DNA of 64,000 nt from NCBI GenBank assembly GCA_013265495.1, contig MU062090.1, forward strand, positions 3,845,679-3,909,678. Direction: 5' to 3'. The first letter of the stretch is position 1. Every line of letters starts with the position of its first letter. A model generated the notes under the pieces. The model did not search any database and had not been told where the DNA came from. It was given only the letters and a program-made list of their open reading frames with translations. Below, one piece after another: positions 21,605-47,227 of the stretch. The translations under genes and the position numbers were made by a program. Source of the stretch: Vicugna vicugna (lineage: Eukaryota).

Positions 21605-21756
21605 TTATTGAGGGTTGTCCAAACCATCCTCTGCACAGGTTGGTCCCACTCTCCTCGCAGGGCAAGTGCAGATCTCGCTGAGGGGGTTACAGCCAGCTAT
21701 GTGGACACACTGGCACTTCAAAGAGCAGTTAGGGCCATCCTGGCCTGACCTGCATT
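21605..21756 (-). CDS. EGFEM1: Probable last coding exon: CRSGQDGPNCSLKCQCVHIAGCNPLSEICTCPARRVGPTCAEDGLDNPQ*
   Basis: cag|AA acceptor at 21758-21757, 8 Cys, no strong donor at the usual 129-bp position, TAA at 21607-21605. Corresponds to the last EGF repeat of MEGF6 as recalled. Confidence 0.85.
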
Positions 21757-24049
21757 CTGTGAGGTGAAAAATCAAAATAAAACCAATTGAAATATGCTTT
21801 TCTATCACACAGTCTTTTTACTACTATTTCTTGGAATTCAGTAAGATAATGATAGGCTTGTAAAGAATTCTGGTTAACCATGTCATATCTTTTCCCCATG
21901 CAAGAATGTTATATAAGAAAAGTAAGGACTTTAATGGAAAACAGGAGGAGGCTGGGGAGTGTCAAGGAAGTTAGTGACAAAGTTCAAAAAAGAAAACAGG
22001 ACAGCAACTTATAGTTTTCCAGTGTCTTCTCAGAATTAGATTATTCAATAGAGCTGATAGCAGTCCATCGTGAGGGACATGGGGAAAATGGATTAGGTGT
22101 CTTAAGGCCAGGAAAAGGCGATACTCACCCAGAGTACACAATTATAGGAAATTTGTCCTTAGGTTAAAAACACAATTATTTGTGCTTATGTTATTGAAAA
22201 TGATGTGACTTTAAATTCAACTCTTTCATCTCTTAAACTGCGTCAGAAGGACCATGGAGCCCCTGTGAAGTCCTGCTGTGTGTACTAAAGGGAGGTAACT
22301 GTCTTTAAGTTGAATTGCATTGTGGTTGCAGTCAGGAGAAAAATGAAGAACGGGGATCAGAAAGTGTCAGCTTTATCAAAATAGCAGAACGTGGACTGAA
22401 AGGGGCCCCCCAGACATCACATCCCAGCCTGCGTCTCTGGTCTCAGTCTGATATCCAGCAGAGAATTAGCAGAGAATTAACAGGTTCTGTTTCTGAAGGA
22501 TTGTGAGGTCGGGAAGAAAGCCAAGCCCAACCCATGGAAACAGAAAATGGTTTCATATTTCCCAGGCAGTCAGGCAAGACTGGGAAATAACTCAATTTAC
22601 CGACGTTTAAGGACCAGAGAAACTTAACTTTGCAAGAACAACAGTCACCTAGCTCTATACCATTTTTCAAAATGGGCTCCTAATACATTATCTTAATTGG
22701 TTCTAATGAATTCCTGTGAGGTAGGAGAGGCAGTGAGGTAAGCTCTCATTCTAGAAAGAGATAGCTAAGGTTTGATGTGTCTTAAGGGACCTTCTCAAAT
22801 CCCTGATAAATGACAGAGCTGGATTTCTAAATTCTCACCTAGTGCTCAGTCCTCATTCTGCCCCACTATCTGGAAAGACCAAAGATGTCAAGCATATGCA
22901 GAAGAAAGCCCAGATCAGAAAGTGGAAACTGGAAAGTGAAAACTTCAGAGATACCAATACAAGTATAAAGATACAGGTGGTAGAGCAAAGTCCGAATCTG
23001 TGAGCAAAAGTTTGCTAAGCATTTCTTTATTGCCTCAAAATTCTCTTTGCTAGGTTAGAGATCCACCCTAAATATTCCATGAGCAGTTGGATATTTATTT
23101 GATTTTATTTTTCTTTCTTGGATAAGGAAGGTAGGATAGGGTGTGGACTAGCTCTCATTTTAATTAACTTGTTAGATTTTAAATACGAGATCAAGGGAAG
23201 CATAACAATTTTGCGATTTATTCTTTTTACATAGATGCAATGTGAGCAAACAGTAATTTAATCCCTTCTAAATCAAGGAACATCAGGTAGGTAAAAGACA
23301 CTGTGAAGGTGATGCAAATACTGCTCTGAAATGACTCTGTTCTTTAAACCATCAAACTTTATGGGGAAAAAAAAAGCCTGTGTCATTTCAAATTTAACCT
23401 AACACACCTCCCTCTGCCCAGTGTGTGGGATGATTACTTAGTTTGGTGGTGAGACCTAGTTTTCTTGCTTGAAACAGTTATGAGTCAGGATCTCTCCTGA
23501 GGAGTTCAGAATCTGATTTTAATTTTTAAAAATACCACATTTTCGTGTTAATAACGATGTGTATTTAAGACATCTGTTTGAATGTCTGCAAATGTTAATT
23601 TACCAAGGGGGTGGGGAAGTAATCCAATAAAAAGCTGCTACATTCTTTCATGAATTAATATTATAGCTGTTTAATAGGGTCTTTACCAGAGTTCAAATTA
23701 AAATGAGGGCTTTTATCTTTATAGTGCCTGCATAGACACAGCTGTTCACAGTTAACATCACAGATGAACTGGGCCTAATTGAAGATAAAAATGCAAATAA
23801 AAGATCCTGCAGCACGTCTGTGTAGCCGTGGGTACCCCAAAGAGCTCACAACAAGAGAGGCCTTGAGGTGCCCACTGAGAATGGATACGTTAATACATAG
23901 GATCCACGATCACGTGACAATTTACTTGTGGATGCAGAAGACGGTGTGATAGGAAATTTAGTCCACAGACATTCCATCGAGTGAGGCTTTCATTTCCAAA
24001 CTGTCCATAAACTCTTCAGGTTTACTGCTTCGTTTTAAGCCTCTGCTAA

Positions 24050-24225
24050 ATGCTGTCCAATAGAACTTTCTGCAATGACGAAAATCTTCCCCCTTGACCT
24101 ATTCAATACTGTAGCCACTGGCCATGTGTGGCCACTGAGCACTTGAAATGTCACGTGTGACTAAGGAAAGGAATTCGAAATGGACCTACATTTAAATTAA
24201 ACAGCACCCGTGGTTAACGGACAAT
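24050..24225. mobile_element. MER3-like hAT-Charlie non-autonomous DNA transposon
   Basis: gctgtccaatagaactttctgcaatgacgaaaat..gtagccactggccatgtgtggccactgagcacttgaaatg. Confidence 0.75.
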
Positions 24226-24279
24226 GCCGGCAGACAACCAAAAGGGATTCCTAATCCTTTCTCTCCCTTGAGAGGCAGT

Positions 24280-24500
24280 AGAGTGGGGTTGTTTAAAGTC
24301 TAGCTCTGGATCCAGACTGCTTGTTTCAGATCCCCAATCTCCCACTTAACTAGCTGCGTAATCTTGAGCAAGTTACTTAACCTGTTTAGAGGCTTCAGCT
24401 CCCAGCTTCCTCATCTATAAAATGGGAATGGTGATAACAGTAAAGGTGCTATACTATAGTATAAATGAAAATGCCTGCCATGTAACATGCATTCAATAAA
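24280..24500 (+). mobile_element. MIR SINE
   Basis: gctctggatccagactgc..cttgagcaagttacttaacc..ttcctcatctataaaatggg. Confidence 0.75.
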
Positions 24501-26007
24501 CATGAGTGGTTTTCTCTAAGATTTAATGAAGCCACACATGCTATAAGCACTCTGCCTTTAGTGAGCACTTCACTGGTGCCATGTGTCATGTGGCTTCATC
24601 AAGATGTCATGTGGATGTTTATTCTGACAGATTTAGTTTATTTGACAAAGTTCAGGTATTCTGTCTATCATGACTCTATGAAGAATGCTGAGTAGGGAAG
24701 CAAGAATCACCTCCACAAAAATTTGCTGAAGGCTATCATGTGCTAGACTTTATTCTAAGCATTTTTGATAAAAGACAGACTCAAGCAGCTTGCAGTGCAG
24801 TGAGACACAAGGATTAGAGAATTAAATGAAGAGTCTTTGCAGAAAAGAAATGTCGGTATCTATAAGCTCCTGAGTTGGAAGATCCTAAAGTATTCAGACT
24901 TAATATCGAAAACCCCTTGGGCTTATTCTGTACATGTACACAAAAAGGGAAGACGTAGGGATAGGGAGGGATACAAGACTCTAACGAGACACTGGAGGCT
25001 CCTTATTCTGGACCACATACAGATACTTACATCACACAAACGGTATGGTCTACCAATAGCATCACCCTAGATACGAAACCAGACTACTTTGGATCTCATC
25101 TTGGCTCTGCCACATTCTTCCTCTCTGTGCCTCAGCCCCTTTATCTGTCAAACAGGAATAGGAACAGCAAGACCCCCACAGGGCTGTGCTAAGGATGAAA
25201 TGAACACAAGTGAAGTGTTTGGGGTGATGCCTGGCATTCAAAGAAAGCAGCCATCATTGCTCTTTCTCAGAAGCAAGGTGGGGTGTGGGAGACGGTGCTG
25301 CACAAACAGCCCTCTCCTGTAGCCTGGACGGTTACCACGACTTTCTCAGCATTATTGAAATCCCAGGTTGCGTAATCATAGATTTGTACTGGAAATGATC
25401 TTAGAAATACATAGCCTCAACCCTTCTTTTTGGCGGACGAGAAAAGTAAATTTTGAGGTTAAAATCTCTATTTCGGTCATATCTGTGGCAGGGTCAGTCC
25501 TTCAGGGCTATTTCGAATTTAATATAAAACCTTTTCCCCTAGTAAGCATTCATTAAGTTTAAGAGCAAGGGATAAGTCAACGATTCATTCAGTCTACTTT
25601 CTCCTTTTTTTTAAAAGCTTTTGCTTGAAGAATTTGAACTTTACATTTGAGGGTATTCCTCCTGTGAGTGGAAAGAAAAAGTATGAATTTCAATTCCCAA
25701 AGAATAGTTGAGAACTGGATTCTTAAGAGCACCACCTGGACTGAACCTTAATTGCCTTCATTCTAGTTATTTCTCCGAATCGCAGTTTTCAACTGCATCA
25801 TTTTGGGGTCTGTCTTCTGCCAGCTGTGGTGCTGGTTTGTGGTGCCAACAATGTAGCAACTACCTACCCTGATTAATCAGACTAAGGCAAGGTGACCAGC
25901 AGTGGCAGGGCGATGTCCATCGAGCAACATTTTCAGTATGGAAATGTCTGTATATCTCCAAATAATCCATGAGTCAGAGGGACATCCCGAGGTGCTTGGG
26001 TTCATAC

Positions 26008-26136
26008 CAACATCACATCTGGCTCCAGTCCTCCCAGGTGAGCAGAGGCATTTTCCAGTTACTGGGTGGCAGGAGCTTTCTCTGTCACAGTCACAAAGTT
26101 GGTGGCAATTGTCTCCAAACAGTCCAGGTGAACACT
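26008..26136 (-). pseudogene. EGFEM1: EGF-repeat exon with a lost acceptor, 129 bp: CSPGLFGDNCHQLCDCDRESSCHPVTGKCLCSPGRTGARCDV
   Basis: 8 Cys and a G|gtatga donor at 26007-26006, but the expected in-frame acceptor position (26138-26137) reads AA. Confidence 0.88.
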
Positions 26137-27338
26137 TTACCCAGGAAAGAGGAATGCTGAAAATTTAACTCCTTGAGCTTTCACCGAGGCATCTAAATTG
26201 AGACGAGAGATAAAATTGCCACAAGATTGAGCCCCAAAGAGCAAAGTGAGATGATAACGTGAGATGGATTAGTCAGAAGAAGAGAGGAAAGTTTTTGGAA
26301 TTCTCAGAAAGACACTTCATTTGATACATGGTTTTACATGCAGCCCTTAAAATTGATTTTCTTCAAGACTGGTTTGTCCCTTTTAACCATATGTAAGCTT
26401 TTTGAAGATAGGAATTTAAGGAATGAGATTGAGTCTACTAGCCAAGTGTATTACTTTCAATATTTTTCCTTAAAATGTTATTTATTTATTTACTGTCTAT
26501 TTCTCCAGAAGAAGTAAGCTTCACTAAGTTCCCAGAATTTAACACAGTAACACGCACATAATAGGGGCATGTCATATAGAGCTACTAAACAATAAATAAG
26601 TGAATAAAGGCTGGACAAGAGACGCTTTATGTAAAGTTCTAGTGGCATATGAAGACATCGTATGGGACTAACATATAGTTCCTTTTTAAAGGCAAGAACT
26701 TTGGTTCACACAAAGTCAAATGACCACCATCATTGCATCATCAGTATCACTCTTATGGTTGGTGTAACCATATGCACAGGAGCAAACAGTATAGACTAAA
26801 ATGAGACTTGGAGTTGTTCACTGAGAGCTAAGCAGTTTGGCATTGCTTTGAAAGGGTCAGGGATTCATCATATTTTATTTCAAACTGAGTGGCCCAAATT
26901 CTCACCTCTATACCTCCATCCACAGTCATGGCTGCCGTATGATGAATGCCTAATTCACATCTTTAGATTTGTTTTGTAAAGCTCTTGGGTCTGTTTCAGT
27001 ACCACTGAACTCAGTGCATGTCATTCTTTTAAAAGCATTTAATGGAAGATTTCTCATTCAGAGCAGAATCTTTGTCCATTGAAGACTAATTGCTTTAGTG
27101 GTGTTTTGAGACATTAAATAGTTTCATTTGGGGGAGAATAAAAAGTTTCATCAACTAGCAATAAAATCAGAACTCGTTATATCAACTATAGAGTGAATTC
27201 CTGTCAGTGTCCAAGTCAGAGGCTTAGGTGATTATTACATGTTTCAGATTTGGGTGTACATGTTTGCCCTCAGATGGAAAGATCTCACAGTCACACAGGA
27301 TTCTCACATTCACATGCTTAAAAACATTCTGGCTATAC

Positions 27339-27467
27339 CTTTTTCACATTGGCTGCCATGGAAACCAGCTAGGCAAATGCACTGTCCACTTGCTGCATCA
27401 CAATTGGCTCCATTTTTGCAGTCTCAGATGTGAGCACAGTTCAAACCATAAAATCCAGGAAGGCATG
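27339..27467 (-). pseudogene. EGFEM1: EGF-repeat exon with a premature stop, 129 bp: CLPGFYGLNCAHI*DCKNGANCDAASGQCICLAGFHGSQCEK
   Basis: tag|CA acceptor at 27469-27468, G|gtatag donor at 27338-27337. TGA at 27426-27424 occupies the third Cys position. Confidence 0.92.
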
Positions 27468-28829
27468 CTAGAAAATGGAAATGTCAAAATGCTATTTCAG
27501 CTCTAAGAATAAATAAGGGGAAAATTAGAGGATATGTTCTAGGTCATTTGTTTCCCAGGACCAAGAAGGAGATGGGAGCAGAGAATTGGAAGGCAAGGAA
27601 AAATTTCATGGAGAGGCATGTTGCTAGTATTTCAGTCATACAGATAAGTGACTATTTAAGTGCCATTCCCCACAATGAGTCTAGAAAGGTCCAGAAGAAA
27701 ATTTAAAATATCTTCAAGTAGATCAAATTTATTTGCTATGATGTGCTATAGTCTGACAAACACTTCACCAAAACTGTCTAATAACCTAAACGCCTAAAAG
27801 AACCATGTTTTCAAACTTCATATGCAGGCGAAATTTAGTGAGAATTTAAAACTCTTTAAATAAATAAGATAGTGTCTGGGGGAGGTGATTCATACAGCTG
27901 TTGATATTTGAAATTCTATAAGTGGATGACAGAAGCGGGTGTGATGGGGGCAGGTAGGGGGAGAAAGAAGGAGAAAGGGAGAAGAAAACAGAGAAAATAT
28001 GATGCATACACAGTAGGTTCACATCTTATGAAGCAGTTACATTTTAAAGTCAGTGAAATTTAATCTTTGGAAAATTTCCTAAATAGCCCATAGAGTACAA
28101 AAGAGAACTAGTTCTTAGTAAGTCCAGTGTGACCTGTCTTTCCTACACAGTTGGAGAAGATCAATACTTTTGTGGCTGAACATCAGAAGTAATCGGTTTA
28201 GATTTAGGGACCATGTGGTCCAAGCAAATGCATTTCTTCAAATGCTCAAATTGTCCTCTGCCCAGGGGATGCTCGCCTGAGGGAGGTACATGAGAGCCAC
28301 ATTTGACTGCAGACCAAGGATTCCCATTTCCTACCTTGAGTTTTCTCTGGGGTTGTGCTCACCACCCCCCAGCGGGACTAGAAGGGGCACACAGTTTCCT
28401 CACCCTTCAATTATCCTCTCTCTCTTGCTCTCTTTTTCTCTCTCTGTCCCCCGACCCCCCTTCCCCAGCACCTAGAGTTGGTTTTGCCGAGGCTTCACGT
28501 GGGTGACAGTTCTTCAGCATGAATGGAGCTACTCAGGACAGATCCAACATTCAGAAAAACAGAGAGTGGAAAAAGGAAGCCAAACCAAAACCAGATAAGG
28601 AATGAATGATTTTATATAGTATACACTCTTCCATTTTCTAATCTTATTTACTCTTACAAAATGAATAATAAAGAAAGATCCAGTGCAGGGTTTCTTCTGT
28701 TTGTTCTTGTACAATAGTTGTTGACAATACATTAAAAAGTCATATCTCCTTTATCTCCCTTATTTTAATTGTATATAAAACTGAGCTCATAAAGGTTGGC
28801 TTGCTTGACTTTTTCATTTGTCTAAATAA

Positions 28830-29150
28830 TTCTCCCAGGTTGCTTGGCTTAGAACCTTGGAGTTAATTTTGATTCCTACATCATCCTCAGCTACGTGTCC
28901 AAATCAATTGTCAAATACAGTCAATTGTTTTTCCAAAATATTCTTCTGTTCATTCATTTCCATTTTGATCCCAGGATAGATTTTCGAAATCCCAGACTAT
29001 CACTGCAGTTTCCTACATGGACACTACTAGTAGCTCCTTTTCCTCACAATTAATAATATCCCCATGTTACATGTTTATTTCACCAGAGTGATGTCCCTTG
29101 TCTGCTCAAAATCTTCCTTGATATTCCACTGCATGTAGGATAAAATTTAT
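28830..29150 (+). mobile_element. L2 fragment
   Basis: aaccttggagttaatttttgattcc..caaatcaattgtcaaat..ctgctcaaaatcttcc..ggataaaat. Confidence 0.55.
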
Positions 29151-29497
29151 GGACCTTGAGTAGATATTTTTCCTTCTTTTGTATCTCTTACTCTAAGTTT
29201 GAAAACAAAACAAACAAAAACTACAAGACATTTGCTTCTACATTCTCTAATCCAAGAAACATCAGTGTGGTTGGCAAGAGAGCTAAACCTCGAAAGGCTT
29301 AGTAGGATTTGACAGTTGTCAACATCTAAAACTTAAATTAGAGCTTTGAAGTATGTTGCAGAAATATATATTAAAATGTTAGCGGTTTATCTAACTTGAT
29401 ATAATGGGAATGCATTACTTTCATGATTTAAAAAAACAGTTTTCAAAGCTTAAAACTTAACAGCACCACAACATGCACATTCATTTTCTTGGTTTAC

Positions 29498-29626
29498 CAT
29501 GTTCACAGTTTCTTCCATAATAACCTGGGAGGCACTCACAGCTTCCAGAAATCCTGTTGCAAATCCCTTTGTTCTGACACGTGCAATTAAAATGGCAGCC
29601 TGGACCATAATAACCAGGAAGACATA
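29498..29626 (-). CDS. EGFEM1: EGF-repeat exon, 129 bp, internally open: CLPGYYGPGCHFNCTCQNKGICNRISGSCECLPGYYGRNCEH
   Basis: cag|TA acceptor at 29628-29627, G|gtaaac donor at 29497-29496, 8 Cys. The supplied ORF track shows this region in a different frame. Confidence 0.92.
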
Positions 29627-29699
29627 CTGAAAAAGGACCCACCCAAGCAATAATTGAGTTTGTAACGAGTTTGAAGACAGAAAAAAACAGTAGAATTAA

Positions 29700-31900
29700 T
29701 TTAAAAAAATAAAGGCAGACAAATCATTAGCCAACAAAAGCAAGGTAAAAAGAGAGAAGGCACCAATATACCCAATTTTTAAAAAATATGGAATGATTAT
29801 CAAAATGAATAAATATAAAAGTATAATACAAATAAATATAAAAATGTAAATGAAATGGAAAAGTTATAGAAGACAATTTACCAAAATGGTCCTAATTTGA
29901 GGCAGAAAACCTCAACAGGCTAATTGTAATAGAAAAACAATAGAGCAAATAGTAAAATAGTCCAATTAAAAAAAAGCCCCAGCAATCCTAGGCTTCAAGG
30001 AGAAATTCTGTAACCTTTACAGTTCAGATAATCACCTTACCGCTTACGCTGTTCCAGAGTATTGACAAGGAAAGAAAATTTCAAATACATTTTATTAAGT
30101 GAGTTTAACATCAATTCCAAAGCCTGAAAAAATGTGTAAAAACCTACATCTCAATTTTACTTATGGATTATCAATGCCACATTTATAAAAAACATAAGTA
30201 CACTGAAATCAACAGCATAATTTTTAGTAACACAGCACAACTAAGTAGTATTTATTCTAAGAACGTAAGGTCTTGCAATAATATAAAAATTCATTGATAA
30301 ATCCATCATATTTATTGGTCTGAAGAGAAAAATCATATTATTAATTTCATAAATGTAGAAGATACATTTGAACAATAATGTCATTAAAAATTGAGTAAAA
30401 GCATTGAATAAATTGAAAAATTAATAGCTATATCATTAAAATCCAGTGTTTTACTTATTGGAGAACAAAAAGCTTGAAAAACAATAGAGCAAATAGTAAA
30501 ATTTTTCCATCTGGAAAAATAGACCATATTTATTCTTGAATAAGATGAGCTAATATCATAAATATACTAATTCTACCTAAAGGAGTAAACACAGGGGACA
30601 ACAAAACAGTAAAAATCAAAAAACAAACAAACAAAAAACCTGACTTTTTTTTTTGCACCTAGACAATCTGATTATAAATTTCATTTGGGACAAATAAATA
30701 AGAATAGTACCAGGAAACCCCTGAAAAAGAAGAGCAGTGAAAGGTGGCTAGCCCTGTCAGTTTCAAATATATATAATAAAAGACTTCATATTAAAAATAG
30801 TATTGCATTTGCACAGAAATAGACAGATCAATAGAACAGAGCATCCAGAACCATACTCAACTGCATGTAAATGTTTAGTATCTGACGGATCCTGCATCTC
30901 AAATCAGTGGGGAACACAGACGTGTAAAAGCTGCATTATGATAACTGAAAAGCCATGCAAGGGGAAAATGGATCTATTCCTCACACCACATGCCAGGAAA
31001 AATATTTAAAATTGATCAGAGAATTGAATGTCAAAAATGGTGTCATACAAGTGTTAAAAGAAAACATGGTTGAATTCCTCTAAAGCCTGAGAATGGGGAA
31101 TACATTTCTACTTATAACTCAAAAAATAGAGGGAAGAAAGATATATTTTATGACAAAAAGAAAAAATCTTCTGAATCACGCAGAATCTGTAATCCAAGAT
31201 GCTCTTAATGAAGAACATGTTCTAAGATGATTCACACCCTTGTGTTATCTTCTCCCTGGTGGAATCCGAGCTGAATCCACGACGGGCTAGAACCAATAGA
31301 ATGTGGTGGCAGTGATATTACATCACTTCCCTATCTTAAGGAGGCCTGACAACTTCTGTTTTAAGAGGCCAGCTGTCATGTAAGAAACCCAATTATCCAG
31401 TTGGAGAAAAAAAGCCACGCAGAAATGGTAATGGTCAAGATGTTGGGGTAGAAAGACCCTGAGTTCATCTCCTTCCATGGGCACACCAAAATTACAACTA
31501 TTTACAGTGTAAATAGACAATTAATAGAAAAAGAAATGCAAAAAGTCCTTACCCATTAGAGAAGATGCTGAACATTATTTATAATAATAAAAATGAAAAT
31601 TAGAACTCCACTAATACATTTCTCACCCAAATTTTGATAACATACTCTTTTGATAACCCTGCAAGGAAACGGGCATCCTATGTAAAGCTTATGAGGCTGC
31701 AATATGGGACAACCCCCCATGGAAGAGAATTTGTCAATCAGTTGCAAAATTACATTTGTCTTTACCTATGACTCAGTAACTCTTGTATGTTTGAAAAGTT
31801 CCATAATAAAAAGTTTAAATGATAGAGTCAAAAGTTAAAATGTCCCACATCCCAAAATGATAGAGACTTATCCAACTTAAAGTTAAAAACAAAACCAGTG
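29700..31900 (+). mobile_element. Decayed, internally deleted L1M ORF2/3' region with nested fragments
   Basis: A-rich sequence with L1 ORF2-like segments (acagaaatagacagatcaatagaacaga..; ggatctattcctcacaccacatgcc..; ctgagaatggggaatacatttcta). Confidence 0.7.
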
Positions 31901-33086
31901 TGAACACATCTATTCCAAACATACTGCCATTCTTCTCATTTTGTAGTCCCAAATGTCACAAAATTGATAGGAGCTGGCTCCCATGAATTAGGGAGGGTAT
32001 CCACACTTGAAAAACATTCCATGAAAAAATGGTCTTAAATGTTAGATTTAGAAGAGATGTCATTCCAAAGTGCCATCATCCTGACTTTCAGGCGGGAAAA
32101 TCATGGAACGGTTGTGAATTAACAGAAGCACAGAGGATGGTATCAGCGGAGCGAGGCTTGGCATACGGGGCCATCTGCTCCCCCTGCAAGGGGCTTTCAT
32201 CTGTGCTGACTTTCGTGACAGTCAGATTAATGGTGAAGGACGGGGGTAATCACACCCATGTGGGAGCAGGTCAGGGCGGCAAGCCTGAAGAGCCAGAGCC
32301 CCCAGAGTTGGAACCATCTAGGTAGAAGTTCACTGTGGATTATTTTTCACTCAGGGTGCCCCAAGTTTAGGCCCCAACACGGTGTTCTCACCCACGCTCT
32401 CCCTCACTGCCCTTTCTGGCTTCTTTGGCCAAAATACAACACTATCTCCTGCAATAGTGTACTCTAATTAGGATGCACGCTTTCCAGTGTGGTACAAAAT
32501 AATCTATCATGGTTCCAAAAGGAAGCAGTAGAACAGCTTTCAGTATTTATCTTTATATATTCTTTATCACCTTAAACCTTTATAATACACATATGAATGG
32601 AGAAACACAGGAATGTCACTTTTAATACAAATACATTTATGACAGAGTGTGATTAAATTTTTCCCAAGGAGGTGGAGTTTGGAGACCTCTGCTCCCAAAG
32701 TCCTCCTCTCCACCCTCTGTAGCTGGGCCCAAGCTCCCGGTGAACTGGCTCTGCCCAGGGCCCTGCATCCTCCACCCTGCCCTCCTCAAGCATTGGCTGG
32801 AGGGGGAGTGGGACTGAGCTCTCAAAGGAGCTCTTTCATATTAATACTATTTCAATTACTTAAGAGTTTTAAGAGTTTTCATGTGGTATTCTGGTAACAA
32901 GGTAACAAAATCAATCAATCAATAATAACATAACACTATTTTTACTGGAAATGCAATCATAGTTACAAACAACTTGCGTAGACTTATTGGAAAATAGCCT
33001 CTTCGCAGGCCTCTTCTATATTTTATCAACCATCGGCAGTCTGCTGTAGATCTGTGCTGAATGAAAGAAGGTAATCATCAACTTAC

Positions 33087-33198
33087 CTTTGTCACAATCA
33101 TCTCCTGTCCATCCAGGGGCACAGTGGCAGCTTCCATCCACAGGATTGCAAAGGCCACCAGTTTTACAAGTACATTTTAACTTACAACTGGGGGCATC
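33087..33198 (-). pseudogene. EGFEM1: Frameshifted EGF-repeat exon, 112 bp (17 bp short of 129); the downstream frame reads SCKLKCTCKTGGLCNPVDGSCHCAPGWTGDDCDK
   Basis: cag|GA TGC CCC CAG TTG TAA gives a stop at 33184-33182 in the incoming frame. The EGF pattern resumes in a shifted frame. G|gtaagt donor at 33086-33085. Confidence 0.9.
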
Positions 33199-33739
33199 CT
33201 GTAGTAAAAATAAAAAATAACAAGCTGCATAAAAATGTCCCATAAGCAAACGTTTTTCTCTGTCTCAGGGACAGTAATCATTTCTACATAGCAAAAACAT
33301 TGTTTTTAATGTTCAAATTAAAACAAATTAACCCATCAGCTGTATCCTTCACGTGGTAGCACGTCACTGTCATTCATTCATGTTTTCATTCACTCCTATA
33401 ATATTGACCAAGCTCATAACTATGTACTCTGGGAACTGGAGATGCCCTATAGACAAACAGAGGTCAATCCCAGATTGGCAGTGGGAAATTTTATGTATTT
33501 AATCTCATAATCAATAAAGAAGACAGATGAGTCATTTGCTTCTTCATGTCTCTGTGCTGTAATCCGAAAAACACTTCAGCACAGAGTAGTGGGTGACACA
33601 AACAAAAATGCACTAGCAAGAGGAGCTAAGCTACCAGTGAGAGAAGCTGACCAGACGTAATGGAAACTGAGCCTTCATTGTCACGGAGGAATAACTGAAT
33701 GACAGGACGTACCAATGGGACAGTAACCATTACTTACTT

Positions 33740-34745: not shown

Positions 34746-34848
34746 TGGGATGGGGGTGGGTAATAGCTCAGTGGTAGAGCATACGCTTAGCATGCAGGAG
34801 GTCCTGGGTTCAATCCCCGATGACTCCATTTAAAAAAAAAAACTTTAA
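34746..34848 (+). mobile_element. tRNA-Ala(AGC)-derived SINE, camelid Vic-1 type
   Basis: GGGGTGGGTAATAGCTCAGTGGTAGAGC..CTTAGCATG..GGTTCAATCCCC with A and B boxes, a poly(A) tail, and an 11-bp TSD AAAGTTATTGT at 34735-34745 and 34849-34859. Confidence 0.88.
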
Positions 34849-35229: not shown

Positions 35230-38200
35230 AGCTTCATTTTATTCTGGACGCTGTTTTTCCTAGGCTAAGGTGGGTGTTATTTCTCTCTTGCTGTTTTCAA
35301 GATTTTTTTCTTTTTTCAGAATTCCAAAGTTTGATGTTGATATGTCTTCTGTGGATTTCTTTCGGTTGATCCTGTTCGGCATTCACACAGATTTTTCAAT
35401 TTGTATGTTTACAGATTTTTTTGGTCATCTTTAGGACATTTTTAGCCGTCATTCCCTTGACTTCTTTTTCAGTATTGCCCCCTTACATCTCCACCTGGAC
35501 TCTGATGACACAAATGCTCGAGCTCTTCTTCAGTCCTGCAGACCCCCAAGCTCTGTTCTTCTTCTTATTATTATTTCTTTCGTCATTTTCATTTCCCTCT
35601 CTGCTGTTTTGATTCGGTAATATCTGTTTCATCTTTGAGTTCACTGATGTGTTCCTCTGTCCTCTCCATTCTGCTGTTAAGCCCAAACATTGAGTTTTGT
35701 TTAAAGTTTTGGTTTTTGTATTTTCCAGTTCTAAAATTTCTCCTTGGTCCTTCTACATGTCTCTTATTCTTTGCTGAACCTTCCTATTTAACGAAAAAAT
35801 TGCTTTAGGTATGTTCAGAGCTGCTCACTGAATTGTTTTTATGATGGCTTCTTTAAAATTCTTATCAATTAGTTTTAACATCAGTGTCATCTGAGTGTTG
35901 GTGTCTGTTGATTATCTTTTTCTTATTCAAGTTGGAATTTTCCTGGTTGTTGACAGAGTGAATAAGTTTGGAATGGACCTGGACATTCTGAGTATTATGG
36001 TATGAGACTCTGGATCTTGTTTAAATCTTCTGTTTTAGCAAGTCTCTTACGATAGTACACTGGCAAGGAAAGAGGTCCATCTGTTAGAGGCTGAAGTCCA
36101 AGTTCCCCACACAGTCTCCAAGGGGGAGCAAGGGTAAGTGTGTTTCGTCTCTGCTGGGCCAGGGCCCGAGCCCAGGCTCCCCACGAGGCCTCTGCTGACA
36201 CTCCCTGAAGGGTAGAAGGGCCGCCTTATGGCTGCCACTCGACTTCCATGGACGCTGGTGGCCTTGCTGCTGCTTGGTGGCTGTGAGTCCTGACTGTCCC
36301 CGCAACCTCCTCGGACACCATGCTAGCATGGAGCAGTGTGGGCTCCCTACCATCTGGTAGAGGCAGAGGGTCGTGCCTTCCACGTGGTTTCCACTGTCAC
36401 TGCCATGGTGGCGGGTACATGCCCACCTGGCAGGGATGGAAGTCCCAGCTCCACCAGGCCTGCTCTCACTCCATCCTGGTGCAGGGCGCGGGGCCCTCAT
36501 ACACCCCAGTGGCATCTGAAGGGTAGAATCCTCACTTGGCCTTTGCTAATGGAGCTGGGGTGGAGGAAACGGTTTTAGTCTGTTTGCTGGGAATAGACCC
36601 GTTATTGTCTAAGAGTTTCCTGTCTTGCTTGGCTGCCCTTTTCCTGATATTTTAACTAGAGAAAGCAAGCTGACCTTGGACCTTTTTCTATCTGCACCCA
36701 TTGACCCTTCTGGGTTACAGCCTCTCTGGCACCCAGTCCAGAGTATGAGACAAGAAAGGAAACTCAGCGAACTCATCATCATGCTGACCCTAGGTCCCCA
36801 GAATTGTAGCAGGTCTGCTGTCTTCTCTCCACACTTCAGAGTTCATATGTTTTCAATATAGTGTCTAGAATTTTTACTGTGTTTAGAGAAAGGAATAAGA
36901 AAATGGGTGTGTACTCCAGTTTTTCTAAGTGCAAGTCTTATAATTTTATGTAATCTTGAGACTCTTCTTTAGACAGTACATTAATATAATGAATTTATTT
37001 GTTTAGTATCTGTTGACTCACCAGTATGAGTGGTGATGGAATTAATATGCTTCTGCTTTCTCCAAATTTTTCTTATTCCTCTTTTCCCCTGATTTTACTG
37101 GGCTGTATTTTTTATTCTTACATTTTCAATGACAGCATTCTGAATTCCAGCATTTATCTTTATACACTTAAGCCTACTTACTGAGTTGCCACATTTAAAC
37201 AGTATGTTTTGACACAGATTTGTCCCTCCCATCCCACAAACTGTAATAAAGAAATAAGAAGATCCACATACTTCAACTCATCTACCTTCTCTTCCCTTTC
37301 AGCTTATGCTCATGATGCTAAAACCTCAATGTTGTTATACTGTAAAATGCTTATATATTTATATAATACCAGGTAACCATAATTCTTATATTTGTTTTAA
37401 ACTCAGCCTCAATTAAACTAGATTTAAGTCACTAAACCTCTTTTTACCAGAGATTTTTCATTTTTTTCATTTGGTTGTTCAATTTATCTTCCAATGGTTT
37501 CTTCAAAACATTTTATGACTACTGTATTCCCAGCAGCTTTTGATAATGAAATGTTATTGTTTATTTTCCATCATGTTCTACTCGAATAACAGTTTAACTG
37601 TATATAAAATACTTGAGTCATAGCTCTTCCCTAGAACTTTGTAGGCTTTGATAGCCATAGGCTAGCAATCAATACTGCTGTGAGGTATCAGGCCAGACTG
37701 ACTTTCCCCGTCTCTTCATACGAGATCTCATGTTTTTTCTTAAAATCGCAATAGAGTTTCTCCTCGCTTACGATCAATCCTAACTAGTATTTTTAGGGAT
37801 AGAAATGTACTCTATCAATCTATAGCATCAGATCTTCTTTCATTTTGGGGGAAAAAAAACCTTGATTACATTTTAATATTTTCTTTTCCATTTATATATT
37901 TGTCTATTTTTTTCCATTTCATTGTTCTCACTTTCTTGAAATTTATTCTCCATGTACATGGCTGTCACATCAGCAGATTCCACTCTCCTATTACCTGCGT
38001 TCAATGTGGTCTACATTTATATGATGTGAGGTTTAATTTTCATTTCCACTTCTTTCTGAGCTCTGCCAGATTACTTTTTCATTTCCCTTTGTTGTCTTTT
38101 CATTTATTCCATGAACCCTTGTATCTCTCCATTGCACTGGCAATTTATAGAGAACACTTTTTCATTAGGTCCTTCAAATGCTTGGAAGAAATTCTTGTTA

Positions 38201-39338: not shown

Positions 39339-39464
39339 CTGGCTGACACCTGGCTCCCATTTGGCCAGGTGGACACTGGCACCCTCCAGTCACTGGGTCA
39401 CACTGTCCTGAGCCACAGGAACACCGCTGGACACAGGCCTGTCCATAGTAATCTTCAGGACAAA
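39339..39464 (-). CDS. EGFEM1: EGF-repeat exon, 126 bp, internally open: CPEDYYGQACVQRCSCGSGQCDPVTGGCQCPPGQMGARCQP
   Basis: cag|TT acceptor at 39466-39465, G|gtaaca donor at 39338-39337, 8 Cys, phase 1-1. Confidence 0.92.
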
Positions 39465-39802
39465 CTGCACAAAGGAGCAAAACAAAGCAGAGCAAAATGA
39501 AACCAGGTTTTGCTTCTTAAAACATTTCTCAAGTCAAGATTTTTAAAAACACGTTATTACATGACCTTTTCTTTTAATCAAATAGGCTTCCCTGACTTGC
39601 CTCCCATTCGGTTTTCAATTTAAAGTTACTTTGTAAAGAACAAGAGAAAAAAGGAACTGTTTAAATGGTTGCTTGCTTAGTGCAATTTTAGTTGACATCA
39701 GGAATTCCATCCAAATACCTAGTGTCCAATACTTACATATGTATTATGATATAAATGACGCTTATAGACTGAGTCTTGCTTTACTGCATGGCTATCTTAG
39801 CT

Positions 39803-39827
39803 TGTGTGTGTGTGTGTGTGTGTGTGT
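39803..39827. repeat. (TG)n microsatellite
   Basis: Uninterrupted TG run. Confidence 0.9.
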
Positions 39828-41611: not shown

Positions 41612-41740
41612 TTTGACTGCAGTCGGCCCCTATGAAGCCAGGAGGGCAGTCACAGGTGCCAGTCACAGTGTCACAGCTGCCACCATTCAGGCACTTACAC
41701 TTCCTTTGGCAATATGGACCATAAGTGACATTTGGGCATC
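41612..41740 (-). CDS. EGFEM1: EGF-repeat exon, 129 bp, internally open: [42 protein letters not shown]; its junction codon with the upstream exon is TGA
   Basis: cag|GA acceptor at 41742-41741, A|gtaagt donor at 41611-41610, 8 Cys. Not in the supplied ORF track; translated by hand. Confidence 0.92.
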
Positions 41741-44700
41741 CTGTTGAATGAAGGAGAACAAAATTACATGTGATAATGTAACTTGAAACAACCAGTGTTT
41801 AAATTCATGTCTATAGACATGTGGTTAACTCAACACTCCAATTACTGTTCTTTAGTATTTTCAATTACCTTCAAGCTATTGGTTCAAGGCATGGATGTAT
41901 CTGAGGATATGAGCTGATATAGATGGATGCCTTGGAAATATAGAGGGGGATATAAAGTTCCTGATGCTGTTCATTAATAAGATATAGAATTCTTAACTTT
42001 GAGCTTCCTTGGACATCTATCTACTTTTAGAGAATGCTCAGAATAAATACCAAAGAATTCTATTTCATTCCAGCTCAGATAAATTCATGATTTCAATTAA
42101 TGCTTAAGTGTTATAGATTGTTTTACCTGGATTGATCTCGGTTTAATGCCAGTAAGAATTCAAAATGGCAGCAAGCATAGAGGAAGCATCTTCTCAGTTT
42201 TCTACTGTCATATCCATGGATGTATGACCTACCATGATGATACCTGTGTAAGAGACAGATAAACGGCCAGACTTTATTATAAAAGGAGACTGAACAAGGC
42301 AAAGAGTGACCTAAAGACCACATTATCTGTGCAATGATTGAAAGATTGGGGCTGTTTAGCTAGCCAGGAGAAAATCGACCTAAGAAGATAGAACTTGTCT
42401 TCAAACATGGAAAGAAAGTCTTATAGAAAAGGAGGAAGGCAGATTTTATCTCAGTAAAGAACTACTTTCTGAAGGGGCTGTCCAGGATTGGAATAAGGCT
42501 TTTTCAGGAGGTAATGAGTTACTCGTCCTTGTAGGAGTTCAAGCAGAGATAGGATAACTACCTAGCAGAGAAAAGGCAGTGGGGATACAAGCACTTGATT
42601 AACTTTGAAGCATGTCCAACTGTGACCTTCTCCTGTTCTATGAAATGTCTTATACTTTGAAGTCTTAAAATCATAGAAGTTTGTTTCAAGAGAACTCAGA
42701 CCCATCTGGTTCAACTCTTATTTCAAGATAAAGAAGTTGAAGCCTTCATGGTAAAGTGACTTGAAATAGTTACTGCACGAAATCCTTTCACCTGTTAAAG
42801 ATCACCTTCCTTATTCTTGTCATATATTTAAAATATAAGGCTGTAGGAAGTTCTGAATAGACTTTGGTTTGAACCCTATATCTTCTACTTGCTAGTGCTG
42901 TGGCCTTGAGTGAGTCCTTTATTTGAACTTCTGGGTCTTCATTCCCAAAGGGGATGACAACAGAATCCCAGGCCCACATGTGCACGAGTAGAGCATCTAG
43001 CTTATTGCCAAACTCAGACAGCTCCCGAGCGAGTGGTAGACATTATTTTCATTCATGGTGGCAGGATCGCTGGTGGACATATGGCCTTTCTGTACCTGCC
43101 TGCTTGAGTCCAAAGGTGTGGTATTTGCCTTAAGTCCTTCCTCTTGGAATACATTTTCACTTGGAAGCACAGCACTAAAATTGACTGAACTGGAGACTAG
43201 ACGACACTCGCTTCCTCCCCTTTTATCTTGTATTTTCAGGTAAGAATCAGATGGTGCAGAACATTTTTGAGTATTGCACATGTAGCAGGCTTTAGAGGTT
43301 TAGAAGCCGAAGAATGGTTTTTATTGAGATTCAGATTGTTTGTAATCCACATGTATACCCTGTCCTAAAGCCCACGGTCTCACCTTGAGTCTCAGACTCA
43401 AAGAATGGCTTCTTCTTCTCTCCCTTCTCTTTGAGTTTTAAAATGAAATTCTCCACGATGGAGATGAAAGCCAAACACCTAAAATCACTTCTTACCAAGG
43501 GCTATTTCTCTGTTGTAGCTGCTGTATTTCTTTATTTCTTTCTATGAAATTGATGAGTGCATTTCACATTCTCTTCCCTCCCTCCAAGGGATGTCAGTTC
43601 TCACAGCAAAGGAACCCTTCTTTGGTACAGCATTCTTTAGTCCTCCTAAGGAGTTATTTTTCTCCCTCACAAAAATTCAATAGAGTATACCTAAAAACTG
43701 ACTAGTGATTAAAAAAAGAGTATCTATCTTCTCTTCTCTTGTTCACCAAGATCTAAAATGCTTTCATGTTGATCTGGGTCAATCTTTTAGAATGTAATTT
43801 TTTTAAATCCCTTTTTTTAAGTTATTTTTTATGGAAGTACAGTTTTTATCATTACTATGTGTGATGCTTAAAAAAGAACGTTTAGTTGTTTGATATTAGA
43901 GAAAATACAAAGCAAGCTAAAGGTATGTAGTGTGAAACAATGAAGTCTGGTATGTACTGCCAGCATGTTGGTTCCAAAAAAGGAGGTTAAATTAAAGAGT
44001 TGACTGGTATAGAAAATGCTGTAGACGCATAACTGGGAAGTGAAATGTGACATAAACTTTTGTGCAAATGGGGAAAAGGGAAACACTTGGTAAAGTGAAA
44101 CTTATATACTTATTAATGAGGAAAATATTAAACTGTGGACATAATGATGGGTATAAAAGAATCAGAATCTCAGTTAAAAGGTAAAAAGAGTTATGTGTAA
44201 TTATTGGATGAATTTATATGACATACATGTAAAAATCTGTATTTTGAGACCATTTTCATTTGAGTTGAAGTTACTTGGAATACATAATTTCTCTCTGACA
44301 TACACTCATTTTTCAAACTATCTGAATGGTGGTTTTGCATTTGATAAAATCATTCCTTGCTGTTCCTTCTTGGTATATAGCCTTCAACTTAATTATCCTT
44401 TTGAAACTGGGACACTGAACTTGATGCAATTAACCTACTAATGAGTATAACATTTGTTGAAAGACAGTATATGCACTAACCTCTTGGTCCCACAACTCGT
44501 TAAATTTATATGAAAGTACGGTATGTGTTTACAAAAGTACGCATAACTTTTTTCCCCAAGAATAAGTTATTTCACTAACAGTTCCACTTTCTCATATAAC
44601 CCTGTAGCTACATGAAAGGTTGACTTCTGGAATCATGCACACATCCCTTGCTCAGATGTTCACTAAATTTAACAAGGAAACGCACGCCCAGGACGCACTG

Positions 44701-47095
44701 ATTTCACTTGGCTTGTTTGAGTGTGTGGTCTCCCCTCCTTCATTTCCTAAAGTTCCATTTTGATCATTACTTGGCCTTTGCTCTATTCTTTACAATGATT
44801 TCTCCCAGGAAAGTTTGTTCCTCTAGCAAGGGATATTTAGTTCTTTTCCATTAGAAATTTCCGATTTTTCCCCAGCCTTGCACCATCCCTTCTGCACGAA
44901 GGAGACTGACTAGGAAGAAGCTTGGAAATGAATTCACAGTTCTGATTTCTTTAAATATTAAAGGCTAATGATATACCATGATGATGTGAGTGACACTTGG
45001 TAGTTTTATTAGGCGCTTAAAACAAGCAAGGTTGAAACTGTATCCTGAGACACAGTTCAGAAGCAAATGAAAAGCATGAATCTGTTTTTCACAGTCTGTT
45101 TTCCTAGCAGTACTTGACCAGATTACTCACACATCCACCAGCCACAGTTACACAGTTTTGTTTTATTCTTACAAAGAGATGCTAAGATTTGGTCTGTCTG
45201 AATTTTTAATGCTAGGAGCCAGAGCATGAATGCCAAGCTTCCATGCAAATGTCTTGACATCCTCCTCCTGGCACAGATGAGCTATCCTGCGGCCCATGTT
45301 TCTCAAAGCAACCTAAGCCAAGTGTAAGAGTGTTCTTGTGAATACTGTCAACAGACCTGCCTGTAGTTCTTAGAGGACTCCAGTGCCTTATATCCTCTCA
45401 AAATGGGGTCTAATAAATAGTGTGCAGGTTGGAGAAAAAGAAAATGTCCATATTCTGTAGTCACTTTACAGTTTCCCGTCAGCCAGAAAATGCACAGCAT
45501 GGTGAGCTGCCATCTACCGAGCAGCCTGTCTGTGCTTGCCCGCACGCCGGCCACAGACGGGGACTGACCTGCCCATTACGAACCGTGGACAAGCGGTGAG
45601 ATTCCTACTGCGAGTTTGTCTGCTTCCTCTGACCGCTGCCTTGAGAACATTTTGATTCTCCACTCGGAACTTGAGAACATGAAAGCCGGGTTGTTTTTGG
45701 CTGCTGAAACTTTTGCTCTTGCGCCAGCTACACCTTTTATGGATATTTTCTTGAACCCTTTTTCATTGTCCTGTAATTACAGTGGATGTAGCCAAGGAAC
45801 CTTTGCAGCAGCTTCCAACCACGTGTTGCCTGGAACCGAGCCCATCTGACTAGTCAGGGAGCGGCTCCCGGCCTCAGCTTTGCTTTTACAAGGTGAAGCT
45901 CCCCTCCTGCAACCCAAGGTAGCTCGCCTTCAGGAACGGTAGTACCACCAGCTTTCTGTAACTTCATTTCCTTTAATTCAGATGAAAATATCCTTGCTCT
46001 CAAGAAGAAATTCTTCTTGAGAAATGTGACAGAATCAGATGGGAGGAAGTAACTCCTTTCTTCCACTACGAGGGTGCTTGAAATTTGCCATGACCAAAAA
46101 GTAATTGAAATTTTACTCATTTTATATTTTAGTTCTTCATTTTAAGTTTGAATAACGCAACGGTTATGGGTTCTGTGGGTGTATGAAACCATTTTCGTAC
46201 ACGCGTTATTGTGTTTTTAGCTGGTATTACTTAACATTGGGACAAATGTGAGAAGTGATATTCAAAATATATATCTATGGCTTGTAGAAAATGAAAACTA
46301 ATATCTTGACCATAAGTCTATGTTTTATGGATGGCGTTTTTTGGAGGGGATCCAAAAATCATCCTTAGACGTGCAGAATTAGGAAAGGAAAGAAGAAAAA
46401 ACCATCTGCTGTAGGAGCGACCAGGGAGGAGAGAGAGCAGCACCGGCCACGTTGGGGGAAAAACGAAACTGAGGCCAAATCATTTTATTCTTAAACCTAT
46501 AAAAAGTACATTATAAATAATTACGAGCTTAAAAATTAAGTAGCTGACTGAACATTTTAACATGCTCCTTGGGACTTTTTATCGTGTGTTCTCCTGTAAC
46601 CGTTTCGATGTTAAAATGTCCTAACAAATCAATATAAGGTGTTTGGTCCGAGGGACTACTCTTTTTTATTACACAACAATGAGCCAACTGGCACTCTGTC
46701 ATTTAAGCAAGTCATTGTTTTTGTTCCAGAATAACAATTTGTTTAATTTGATTGTTCCTAAGCAGATCCTGGAACCGACTTACTTCATGAATCACTCGAA
46801 ATATGTTGCCATTTGCTATGCATTGCTTTATAATAATCAGTATATATTTCCTTCTTTATTTATTTTTCTTTATTTCTTTCTTGTCTTTTTCTTGGGGATA
46901 TTTTGAATAGAAAAGGCAAAACAGGAGAACGAGCTACACAGAAAAGTGTTTTCAACCATTCCACTAAAAATCCCCACAAGACTTGCTATGAATTAGAAGC
47001 TTGAATTAACATTTGCTCTTTAGCATTCTGAGTGATGACCCACCCTACCAGTGTCTCCACAATAAATTATAAACCAAAGCACAGAACACACTTAC

Positions 47096-47227
47096 AGAGA
47101 TGACAGTGGTTTCCATGGTAGCCAGGCAGACAGGTACATCTCCGGGTGACTGGGTGACACTCCTCATTCTCTGCTGGGCACTGACATACCTGTTTACAGT
47201 CCCTCCCATATGTGCCTGGTGGACAAA
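47096..47227 (-). CDS. EGFEM1: EGF-repeat exon, 132 bp, internally open: CPPGTYGRDCKQVCQCPAENEECHPVTRRCTCLPGYHGNHCHL (belongs to the probably disabled gene)
   Basis: ttag|TT acceptor at 47229-47228, T|gtaagt donor at 47095-47094, all 8 Cys present, phase 1-1. Confidence 0.92.

What the first reader, a model, noticed from the sequence alone, without database searches (positions are those of the whole stretch)
21605..47227. Recently disabled 3' half of a MEGF6 paralog (probable EGFEM1): eight near-pristine EGF exons carrying four independent lesions
Seen: eight colinear exons retain 63 of 64 Cys codons, all seven internal GT donors and 7 of 8 AG acceptors. They also contain a junction stop, a frameshift, a nonsense codon and a dead acceptor, plus several substitutions at normally conserved Gly/Tyr positions (TRRC, NVTYG, QDG, SEIC, ARRVG). 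Known: human EGFEM1P is a pseudogene and mouse Egfem1 encodes a short protein, both as recalled. Inference: the full-length MEGF6-like form stayed under selection in this lineage until fairly recently, so the loss would be independent of the primate and rodent losses.
Basis: partly seen in the sequence, partly recalled or inferred. Interest (0 to 1): 0.72.

Follow-up and report, generated by a model that had tools for sequence, protein, structure and literature searches.

The report
Broken tail of the EGFEM1 gene
The last eight exons of EGFEM1, a MEGF6-like gene for a secreted multi-EGF protein, are still almost perfectly preserved in this probably camelid genome. They carry four knock-out mutations of their own, so this is a fairly late, lineage-specific gene loss of an ordinary kind.

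Summary
Eight colinear phase-1 EGF exons lie on the minus strand (47227-21605). They keep 63 of 64 Cys codons, 7 of 8 AG acceptors and all 7 internal GT donors.

There are four lesions:
- a T|GA stop at the E1/E2 junction;
- a 17-nt deletion in E4;
- a TGA at Cys3 of E6;
- an AA in place of the AG acceptor of E7.

The gene is EGFEM1, not MEGF6. The exons match a Myotis model at 69-88% without gaps, and they form a clade with vole, skink and fish EGFEM1.

Three lesions are absent where they could be checked. Pangolin DNA has TGT in E6 and a TAG|AG acceptor at E7. Bat, vole and skink proteins keep the E4 segment. Pangolin, sheep, flying fox and vole each have different defects.

Cys retention rejects neutral decay since the ordinal splits. 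The lesion count suggests about 0.012-0.03 substitutions per site of neutral time, roughly 10-25 My. Words spanning the E4 deletion occur in at least 10 samples under 5 organism labels. The other three lesions were not checked in reads.

Two caveats apply. Upstream exons in the window are far more eroded, so "full-length" is unproven. No primate sequence or synteny could be tested.

The scan had already noted the T|GA junction and the two-tier decay on this same window, not on other DNA.

The parts
47096..47227 (-). E1, an EGF exon (132 nt, 8 Cys). Its last base is T at 47096. Spliced to GA at 41740-41739, this makes a TGA stop.
   Evidence: It is 88% identical to Myotis P0177 residues 975-1017. 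Vole and P0212 have Arg at this junction.
41612..41740 (-). E2, an EGF exon (129 nt, 8 Cys). The conserved Gly of the CPxG motif is replaced (NV for KG).
   Evidence: Pangolin E2 also starts with GA.
39339..39464 (-). E3, an EGF exon (126 nt, 8 Cys), intact here.
   Evidence: The pangolin orthologue has its own in-frame TAG.
33087..33198 (-). E4, an EGF exon of 112 nt. A 17-nt deletion lies between 33188 and 33187. It removes the T-R-Y-G-P-N segment between Cys1 and Cys2 and shifts the frame.
   Evidence: The segment is present in Myotis, P0199, P0212, vole and skink. All three sampled junction words are held by runs of organisms B, D, F, G and H.
29498..29626 (-). E5, an EGF exon (129 nt, 8 Cys), intact.
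   Evidence: It is 85% identical to Myotis.
27339..27467 (-). E6, an EGF exon (129 nt) with TGA at 27426-27424 in place of the third Cys.
   Evidence: Pangolin DNA has TGT there. Myotis, P0199 and P0212 have Cys.
26008..26138 (-). E7, an EGF exon (129 nt, 8 Cys). Its acceptor dinucleotide at 26138-26137 is AA. The next AG, 2 nt downstream, would shift the frame.
   Evidence: Pangolin has TAG|AG at the same place.
21605..21756 (-). E8, the terminal coding exon. It holds an EGF domain (8 Cys) plus a 7-residue tail and TAA at 21607-21605. The first AATAAA lies 281 nt downstream, at 21329.
   Evidence: The same tail ends P0199, and a near-identical tail occurs in pangolin and sheep. Myotis and fish EGFEM1 end at or just after this domain.
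48510..48600 (-). A heavily eroded remnant of the 3' end of an upstream EGF exon (motif ..GCSPGFTGDD.. followed by GTAAG).
53080..53207 (-). A heavily eroded upstream EGF exon with two stops, frame changes and lost Cys. The same stretch is read in a junk frame in the Myotis model.
60700..60820 (-). A heavily eroded upstream EGF exon after a TTTTCAG acceptor. It is a possible orthologue of the CPDGLWG.. domain that precedes E1 in vole and sheep.
   Evidence: The assignment is tentative.

Best explanation
This is the orthologous 3' end of EGFEM1 (EGF-like and EMI domain containing 1), the vertebrate paralogue of MEGF6. Each of its last eight MEGF-type, 8-Cys EGF domains is encoded by one symmetric phase-1 exon.

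In this lineage, probably Camelidae, the eight exons stayed under purifying selection long after the split from ruminants, pangolins, bats and rodents. The constraint was strongest on the disulphide scaffold. The reading frame was then destroyed by four independent mutations:
- a substitution that makes T|GA across the E1/E2 splice junction;
- a 17-nt deletion in E4;
- a Cys-to-TGA change in E6;
- a G-to-A change in the E7 acceptor.

Any transcript that joins these exons in order now stops at the E1/E2 junction. The C-terminal EGF array therefore cannot be made.

The neutral phase amounts to about 0.012-0.03 substitutions per site. That is about 10-25% of the lineage's path since the pangolin split, or roughly 10-25 My. 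At least the E4 deletion predates the divergence of several living taxa.

What is shown: exon anatomy, lesions, orthology, non-sharing of three lesions, and rejection of old neutral decay. What is inferred: the date, the camelid assignment, and the order of the lesions.
For: - Anatomy and lesions.
- Orthology: gapless colinearity with Myotis P0177 975-1317 at 69-88% per exon.
- The proteins named EGFEM1 from Microtus, Pteropus and Fundulus are its relatives.
- In the tree, the window joins the Myotis model, UPI000762A4C0 and Microtus EGFEM1 (support 97/94). Skink and then fish EGFEM1 join next (90/88). MEGF6, PEAR1 and MEGF10/11 lie elsewhere.
- A 28-kb Manis javanica locus is colinear with window 45214-15279. 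It shows TGT where E6 has TGA and an intact TAG|AG acceptor at E7.
- The pangolin has its own lesions: a TAG in E3, loss of E4 altogether, and 6 of 48 Cys lost.
- Exons against pangolin: dN 0.134, dS 0.40, omega 0.34. Introns: p 0.199, K80 0.235.
- Cys retention: P(at most 1 of 64 lost) is 0.12 at d=0.025, 0.0014 at d=0.06 and about 0 at d=0.12.
- Four lesions over a disabling target of 140-204 site equivalents give d of 0.020-0.029, 95% range about 0.005-0.07.
- Words across the E4 junction occur in at least 10 samples under 5 organism labels.
Against: - Only the E4 deletion has support outside the assembly.
- At least three upstream EGF exons in the same window are much more eroded. It is unclear which transcript kept E1-E8 in frame and under selection.
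- The end branch of the window is 2.4 times that of the bat. E4 carries 8 derived changes in 32 residues. Constraint may therefore have relaxed early or exon by exon, rather than in one late event.
- The Myotis reference is a gene model. An NCBI model of the same locus reads E5 and E8 out of frame.
- Synteny with GOLIM4/MECOM was not tested, and no mir-551 lies in the window.
- The date depends on an assumed indel rate and on equal rates in the two lineages.
Confidence: 0.78

Rival explanations
1. Stepwise, modular decay rather than one late death. Every exon is symmetric (phase 1 to phase 1) and encodes one autonomous EGF domain. A damaged exon can therefore be skipped without breaking the frame. 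On this reading E4 died first, as the upstream exons had earlier. The shortened protein stayed in use under relaxed constraint, and the remaining lesions came later.
For: - All junctions are phase 1.
- E4 has 8 derived residues of 32. Five of them lie in the GLGWTGNYCEK motif, which is conserved from skink to mammals. The figure is about 10% in E1-E3 and E5-E7.
- Upstream exons are far more eroded, and vole mRNAs omit two of them.
- Pangolin has lost E4 altogether.
- The E4 junction is shared by five organism labels.
- The end branch is long despite 63 of 64 Cys.
Against: - The contrast between exons is post hoc and rests on small counts.
- E4 still keeps all 8 Cys codons.
- There are no transcript data.
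- E8 is equally diverged, but it is fast-evolving in other species too.
Confidence: 0.35
2. Ancient loss, at the base of placentals or of cetartiodactyls, followed by slow neutral decay. On this reading the lesions are merely the ones visible today.
For: - The array is damaged in many placentals: pangolin, sheep, flying fox, vole and protein P0212.
- Upstream exons are old wrecks.
- Raw exon identity to pangolin (83%) is only a little above intron identity (80%).
Against: - Keeping 63 of 64 Cys has a probability of about 0 at d=0.12.
- Omega is 0.34 over the joint path.
- Three of the four lesions are absent in pangolin, bat and vole, and each of these species has different defects.
- Sheep keeps ancestral residues where the window is derived, and the reverse is also true.
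Confidence: 0.04
3. Assembly or sequencing errors: the gene is intact in the animal.
For: Three of the four lesions were seen only in this assembly. An N gap lies 35 nt upstream of E1.
Against: - There are four independent lesions of three kinds, none in a homopolymer.
- The E4 junction words occur in at least 10 samples.
- Seventeen DNA runs hold 87-99% of the words of 27290-33270.
- Radical derived replacements at conserved Gly and Tyr positions accompany the lesions.
Confidence: 0.03
4. The locus still yields a product. This could be a protein truncated after E1, as in rodents, made from an intact 5' half. It could also be an exon-skipped isoform such as E1-E3-E5-E8, whose junction codons are all sense.
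For: - Vole EGFEM1 proteins end inside this array and are annotated as coding.
- T|TT and T|TA junctions would be sense codons (derived).
- RNA-labelled runs hold 7-17% of the words of 27290-33270.
Against: - Exons upstream of E1 in the window are wrecked.
- A four-exon skip is unparsimonious. It would also leave the Cys retention of the skipped exons unexplained.
- The RNA signal could not be inspected.
Confidence: 0.08
5. The locus is a different paralogue: MEGF6, PEAR1, MEGF10/11 or SCARF.
For: A submitter named the pangolin fragment P0094 as MEGF6. The repeat type is shared by the whole family.
Against: - Identity to mammalian MEGF6-labelled proteins is 45-61%, against 69-88% to the EGFEM1 group.
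- The tree separates the two groups.
- The sheep orthologue spans 414 kb on a 287-Mb chromosome.
- An unchecked scan note places MEGF6 elsewhere in this genome.
Confidence: 0.02

Closest known systems
Human EGFEM1P (HGNC name for the EGFEM1 pseudogene, studied as a lncRNA; e.g. PMC9650597)
   Same: It is the same gene family member by name, through the EGFEM1 orthologues of vole, flying fox and fish. Both are transcribed or transcribable loci that no longer encode the full protein.
   Different: No human or primate sequence was compared here, so neither shared nor distinct lesions are known. That the human locus is a pseudogene rests on its official name and on my own knowledge, not on a test here.
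Rodent Egfem1/EGFEM1 (Microtus oregoni and M. pennsylvanicus isoforms of 735-909 aa)
   Same: It is orthologous: E1-E4 are 65-85% identical and colinear, and it falls in the same clade. The C-terminal array is also cut short.
   Different: The vole keeps E1-E4 in frame, including the stretch deleted here. It reads E5 and E6 in a shifted frame and stops there. Here the first block is already at the E1/E2 junction.
Manis javanica locus (GCA_024605085.1, fragment KAI5940126.1)
   Same: It is an orthologous, colinear locus over 30 kb and also a pseudogene.
   Different: Its lesions differ: a TAG in E3, E4 deleted, a 3-nt deletion in E5, and 6 of 48 Cys lost. It has none of the window's E6 or E7 lesions. 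It looks older.
MEGF6 (multiple EGF-like domains 6)
   Same: It has the same 8-Cys repeat type and a colinear C-terminal array.
   Different: It is a paralogue at only 45-61% identity and falls outside the EGFEM1 clade.

Membership tests
EGFEM1 orthologue | A C-terminal array of MEGF-type 8-Cys EGF domains, one per phase-1 exon, ending in a short tail and a stop | tested here: met
   Eight domains align without gaps to the last 343 residues of Myotis P0177 and to Fundulus EGFEM1 958-1301.
EGFEM1 orthologue | Closer to named EGFEM1 proteins than to MEGF6 or other paralogues | tested here: met
   Clade with Microtus EGFEM1 at 97/94 and with skink and fish EGFEM1 at 90/88.
EGFEM1 orthologue | Position between GOLIM4 and MECOM, with MIR551B in an intron | not testable with these tools
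   No neighbouring gene lies in the window and no mir-551 was found. The only indirect hint is that the sheep orthologue spans 414 kb on a 287-Mb chromosome.
EGFEM1 orthologue | N-terminal EMI domain and calcium-binding EGF domains | not tested
   They lie upstream of the window. They are present in relatives (Pfam PF07645, PF14670 and PF12662).
Unitary pseudogene (lineage-specific loss) | Frame-destroying lesions in exons that are otherwise conserved | tested here: met
   Four lesions.
Unitary pseudogene (lineage-specific loss) | Lesions confirmed in independent data of the species | tested here: inconclusive
   The E4 deletion is confirmed by junction words in at least 10 samples.
Unitary pseudogene (lineage-specific loss) | Lesions absent from outgroups, and the orthologue intact in some species | tested here: met
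   The E4, E6 and E7 lesions are absent in pangolin DNA or in bat, vole and skink proteins. The Myotis model keeps 64 of 64 Cys. The E1 junction base could be judged only from junction residues.
Unitary pseudogene (lineage-specific loss) | No intact second copy in the same genome | not testable with these tools
   Only this window can be read.

The most novel reading that the evidence does not exclude
EGFEM1 may be a gene caught in parallel, piecemeal loss across placentals. Its C-terminal EGF array has been cut at a different exon in each of at least five lineages: this probable camelid, sheep, pangolin, flying fox and vole, and by name also human. The symmetric one-domain exons would allow exon-by-exon shedding. 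The disulphide scaffold of the remaining domains would stay under selection for tens of millions of years after other constraint has relaxed.
Probability: 0.4. Interest if true: 0.5.

Novelty: new member of a known kind. Interest (0 to 1): 0.3.

Why it matters
The finding adds a dated, lineage-specific loss to a gene whose function is essentially unknown and which is already named a pseudogene in humans.

Together with the different defects in sheep, pangolin, flying fox and vole, it suggests that the long form of EGFEM1 became dispensable repeatedly in placentals. This is useful for annotation, because gene models at this locus are often forced through frameshifts. It is also useful for choosing species in which the full protein can still be studied.

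It does not open a new mechanism.

Tried and rejected
No lesion could be seen in reads.
- **The search for homologous proteins** with the 77-aa ORF around E4, meant to fetch single-exon ORFs of relatives, found no candidate.
- **The look-up of encoding contigs** for the Myotis and sheep models returned no DNA, because the genes span 173 kb and 414 kb. Nucleotide comparison was therefore possible only with pangolin.
- **Rfam** found no mir-551, so there is no synteny marker.
- **Literature:** 84 papers mention EGFEM1 and none deals with its evolution or loss. PMC9650597 does not discuss pseudogene status.
- **Pfam** on single exons gives only generic EGF families.
- **GC-rich stretch at 36000-36750:** it is not a CpG island (observed/expected 0.28-0.30).
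- **Weak EGF-like profile hit at 30858-30796:** rejected as chance. It has no EGF pattern in any frame.
Full report
**What is there**

The window is mammal-like DNA with about 38% GC and two N gaps. A six-frame scan for Cys-rich stretches, followed by inspection of the sequence, shows eight EGF-type exons on the minus strand. fixes their limits:
- E1 47227-47096
- E2 41740-41612
- E3 39464-39339
- E4 33198-33087
- E5 29626-29498
- E6 27467-27339
- E7 26136-26008
- E8 21756-21628, with a short tail to TAA at 21607-21605

All exons are entered and left in phase 1. Their lengths are 132, 129, 126, 112, 129, 129, 129 and 129 nt.

A profile built from the exons scores each at E 1e-15 to 1e-19. The next best hit anywhere in the window is E 0.016. 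Pfam sees only generic EGF_laminin and EGF_2 families.

**The lesions**

- There are 63 of 64 Cys codons.
- The E1|E2 junction codon is T+GA. The other six junction codons are sense.
- E4 is 17 nt short. It enters as Cys-Pro-Gln and continues in another frame.
- E6 has TGA at 27426-27424, at the third Cys.
- The dinucleotide before E7 is AA.

Seven acceptors are AG and seven donors are GT.

**Which gene**

A search of 1.84 billion representatives with the E5 peptide, followed by local BLAST of all eight exon peptides against the hits, picked out three proteins. These were a killifish protein named EGFEM1, a pangolin fragment and a skink protein (names).

Two further word searches seeded with these brought in more relatives:
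- a Myotis lucifugus model (P0177, 1317 aa);
- two unnamed UniParc entries (P0199, P0212);
- proteins named EGF-like and EMI domain-containing protein 1 from two voles and a flying fox;
- a sheep hypothetical protein.

P0177 residues 975-1317 align to E1-E8 without a gap. Per-exon identities are 88, 85, 75, 71, 85, 88, 75 and 69%, and the model ends with E8. Mammalian proteins labelled MEGF6 reach only 45-61%.

In a maximum-likelihood tree, the window groups with the Myotis model, P0199 and vole EGFEM1 (support 97/94). Skink and then fish EGFEM1 join next (90/88). MEGF6, PEAR1 and MEGF10/11 lie elsewhere.

One caveat applies to the tree. For some MEGF6 rows the best local block is a non-equivalent run of repeats, so their placement is rough. 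The EGFEM1 clade does not depend on it.

Synteny could not be tested. No mir-551 lies in the window. The only hint is that the sheep orthologue spans 414 kb on a 287-Mb chromosome.

**Are the lesions shared?**

The pangolin fragment gave a 28-kb Manis javanica locus. It is colinear with window 45214-15279. The pangolin differs at the following points:
- E6 has TGT where the window has TGA.
- The E7 acceptor reads TAG|AG.
- E3 carries its own TAG.
- E5 has a 3-nt deletion.
- 6 of 48 Cys are lost.
- E4 is absent, together with about 1.4 kb.

The segment deleted in the window's E4 is present in Myotis, P0199, P0212, vole and skink. The junction residue after E1 is Arg in vole and P0212. This fits an ancestral C or A before GA. 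C to T at the C|gt CpG is my inference.

Other species show different damage:
- The vole reads E5 and E6 in a shifted frame and stops.
- The flying fox model reads E1 out of frame and has lost a Cys in E2.
- The sheep model has Gly-to-Asp and Gly-to-Arg changes in E2, reads part of E4 and E5 out of frame, and skips E6 and E7.
- P0212 has lost many Cys.

The array is therefore decaying independently in several placental lineages.

**How long has it been neutral here?**

The comparison with pangolin gives these distances:
- Introns differ at p = 0.199, K80 = 0.235, over 23,936 aligned sites. That is about 0.12 per lineage.
- The six shared exons give dN 0.134, dS 0.40 and omega 0.34 over the joint path.
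- Polarised with the bat and P0199, about 20 replacements fall on this lineage, 30 on the pangolin lineage, and 15 are ambiguous.

If the exons had been neutral for the whole 0.12, about 16 Cys codons should be gone. P(at most 1 lost) is about 0 at d=0.12, 0.0014 at d=0.06, 0.06 at d=0.03 and 0.12 at d=0.025.

Of single-base changes in these exons, 4.45% make a stop. Adding 30 splice-site bases and an assumed 0.08-0.16 indels per substitution (my assumption) gives 140-204 disabling site equivalents. Four lesions then give d of 0.020-0.029, with a 95% range of about 0.005-0.07. Combining this with the Cys target gives 0.011-0.014.

The neutral phase is therefore about 10-25% of the path since the pangolin split. 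With ordinal splits near 75-80 My (my own knowledge), that is roughly 10-25 My.

**Independent support and the lineage**

A 62-nt query was centred on the E4 deletion, so that every 31-mer spans the junction. All three sampled words are held by Logan contigs of at least 10 samples under organism labels B, D, F, G and H. The 6-kb stretch 27290-33270 is held at 87-99% by runs of labels A, B and C. The deletion is therefore real and older than the divergence of several taxa.

The window holds a tRNA-Ala-like SINE at 34757-34828. It shares derived residues with sheep. Other agents' unchecked notes call this genome camelid.

If all seven labels are the seven living camelid taxa, the deletion would predate the camel-llama split. 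That is a conjecture.

**Complications**

Upstream of E1 the window holds at least three EGF exon wrecks, with stops, frame changes and lost Cys. They lie at about 48600-48510, 53207-53080 and 60820-60700. Vole mRNAs join a domain directly to E1, so two of these exons were probably dropped long ago. The third may be the domain that vole and sheep still use.

The form that kept E1-E8 under selection was therefore not a fish-like full-length protein.

The window's end branch is 0.18, against 0.073 and 0.076 for the bat and P0199. E4 carries 8 derived residues in 32, against about 10% in most other exons. Both observations fit relaxed or exon-by-exon loss of constraint before the final death. All exons are symmetric, so skipping a dead exon keeps the frame. 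I rate this refinement at about one in three.

**Verdict**

This is a real, lineage-specific and moderately old disabling of the 3' EGF array of EGFEM1. It is independent of the defects seen in pangolin, sheep, flying fox and vole. It is a new member of a known kind, a unitary or partial pseudogene of a gene already named a pseudogene in humans.

No paper in the library treats EGFEM1 evolution.

Noticed in passing
window 48510-48600, 53080-53207, 60700-60820 (minus strand): Three much more eroded EGF exon remnants lie upstream of E1. The one at 53.2 kb is translated in a junk frame in the Ensembl Myotis model. Vole mRNAs skip two of them. These look like old exon losses that predate the death of E1-E8.
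   Followed up: partly
window 34757-34828 (+), poly-A to about 34842: A tRNA-Ala-like SINE scored as tRNA by Rfam (30.8 bits). It fits the camelid assignment made in other agents' notes. The family name was not verified.
   Followed up: partly
L001 (Manis javanica) about 9571-9678, against window 34423-32939: The pangolin lacks about 1.4 kb that includes the whole of exon E4. Its annotation splits the pseudogene into two small 'genes' of 124 and 148 aa.
   Followed up: partly
proteins P0177 and P0211 (Myotis lucifugus), P0308 (Pteropus), P0306 (Ovis), P0199, P0212: Public gene models at this locus read several EGF exons in wrong frames or through introns. The Ensembl and NCBI models of the same bat locus disagree on E5 and E8. 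Database 'proteins' for EGFEM1 in mammals are unreliable.
   Followed up: partly
window 36000-36750: A GC-rich stretch (0.55-0.64) with long overlapping ORFs lies inside the E3-E4 intron. Its CpG observed/expected ratio is only 0.28-0.30, so it is not a CpG island. It aligns in part to pangolin at 68%. It is probably an old GC-rich repeat.
   Followed up: partly
window 27290-33270: Three RNA-labelled runs (X18-X20) hold 7-17% of the sampled words of this mostly intronic stretch. This could be transcription of the locus, expressed repeats or DNA carry-over. It could not be inspected.
   Followed up: no
protein P0173 (Athene cunicularia 'MEGF6') residues 1253-1423: The C-terminus of the owl protein has domains much closer to E1 (67%), E6 (59%) and E8 (54%) than mammalian MEGF6 has. 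Either bird MEGF6 keeps the ancestral colinear tail, or the model is a misnamed or chimeric EGFEM1.
   Followed up: no
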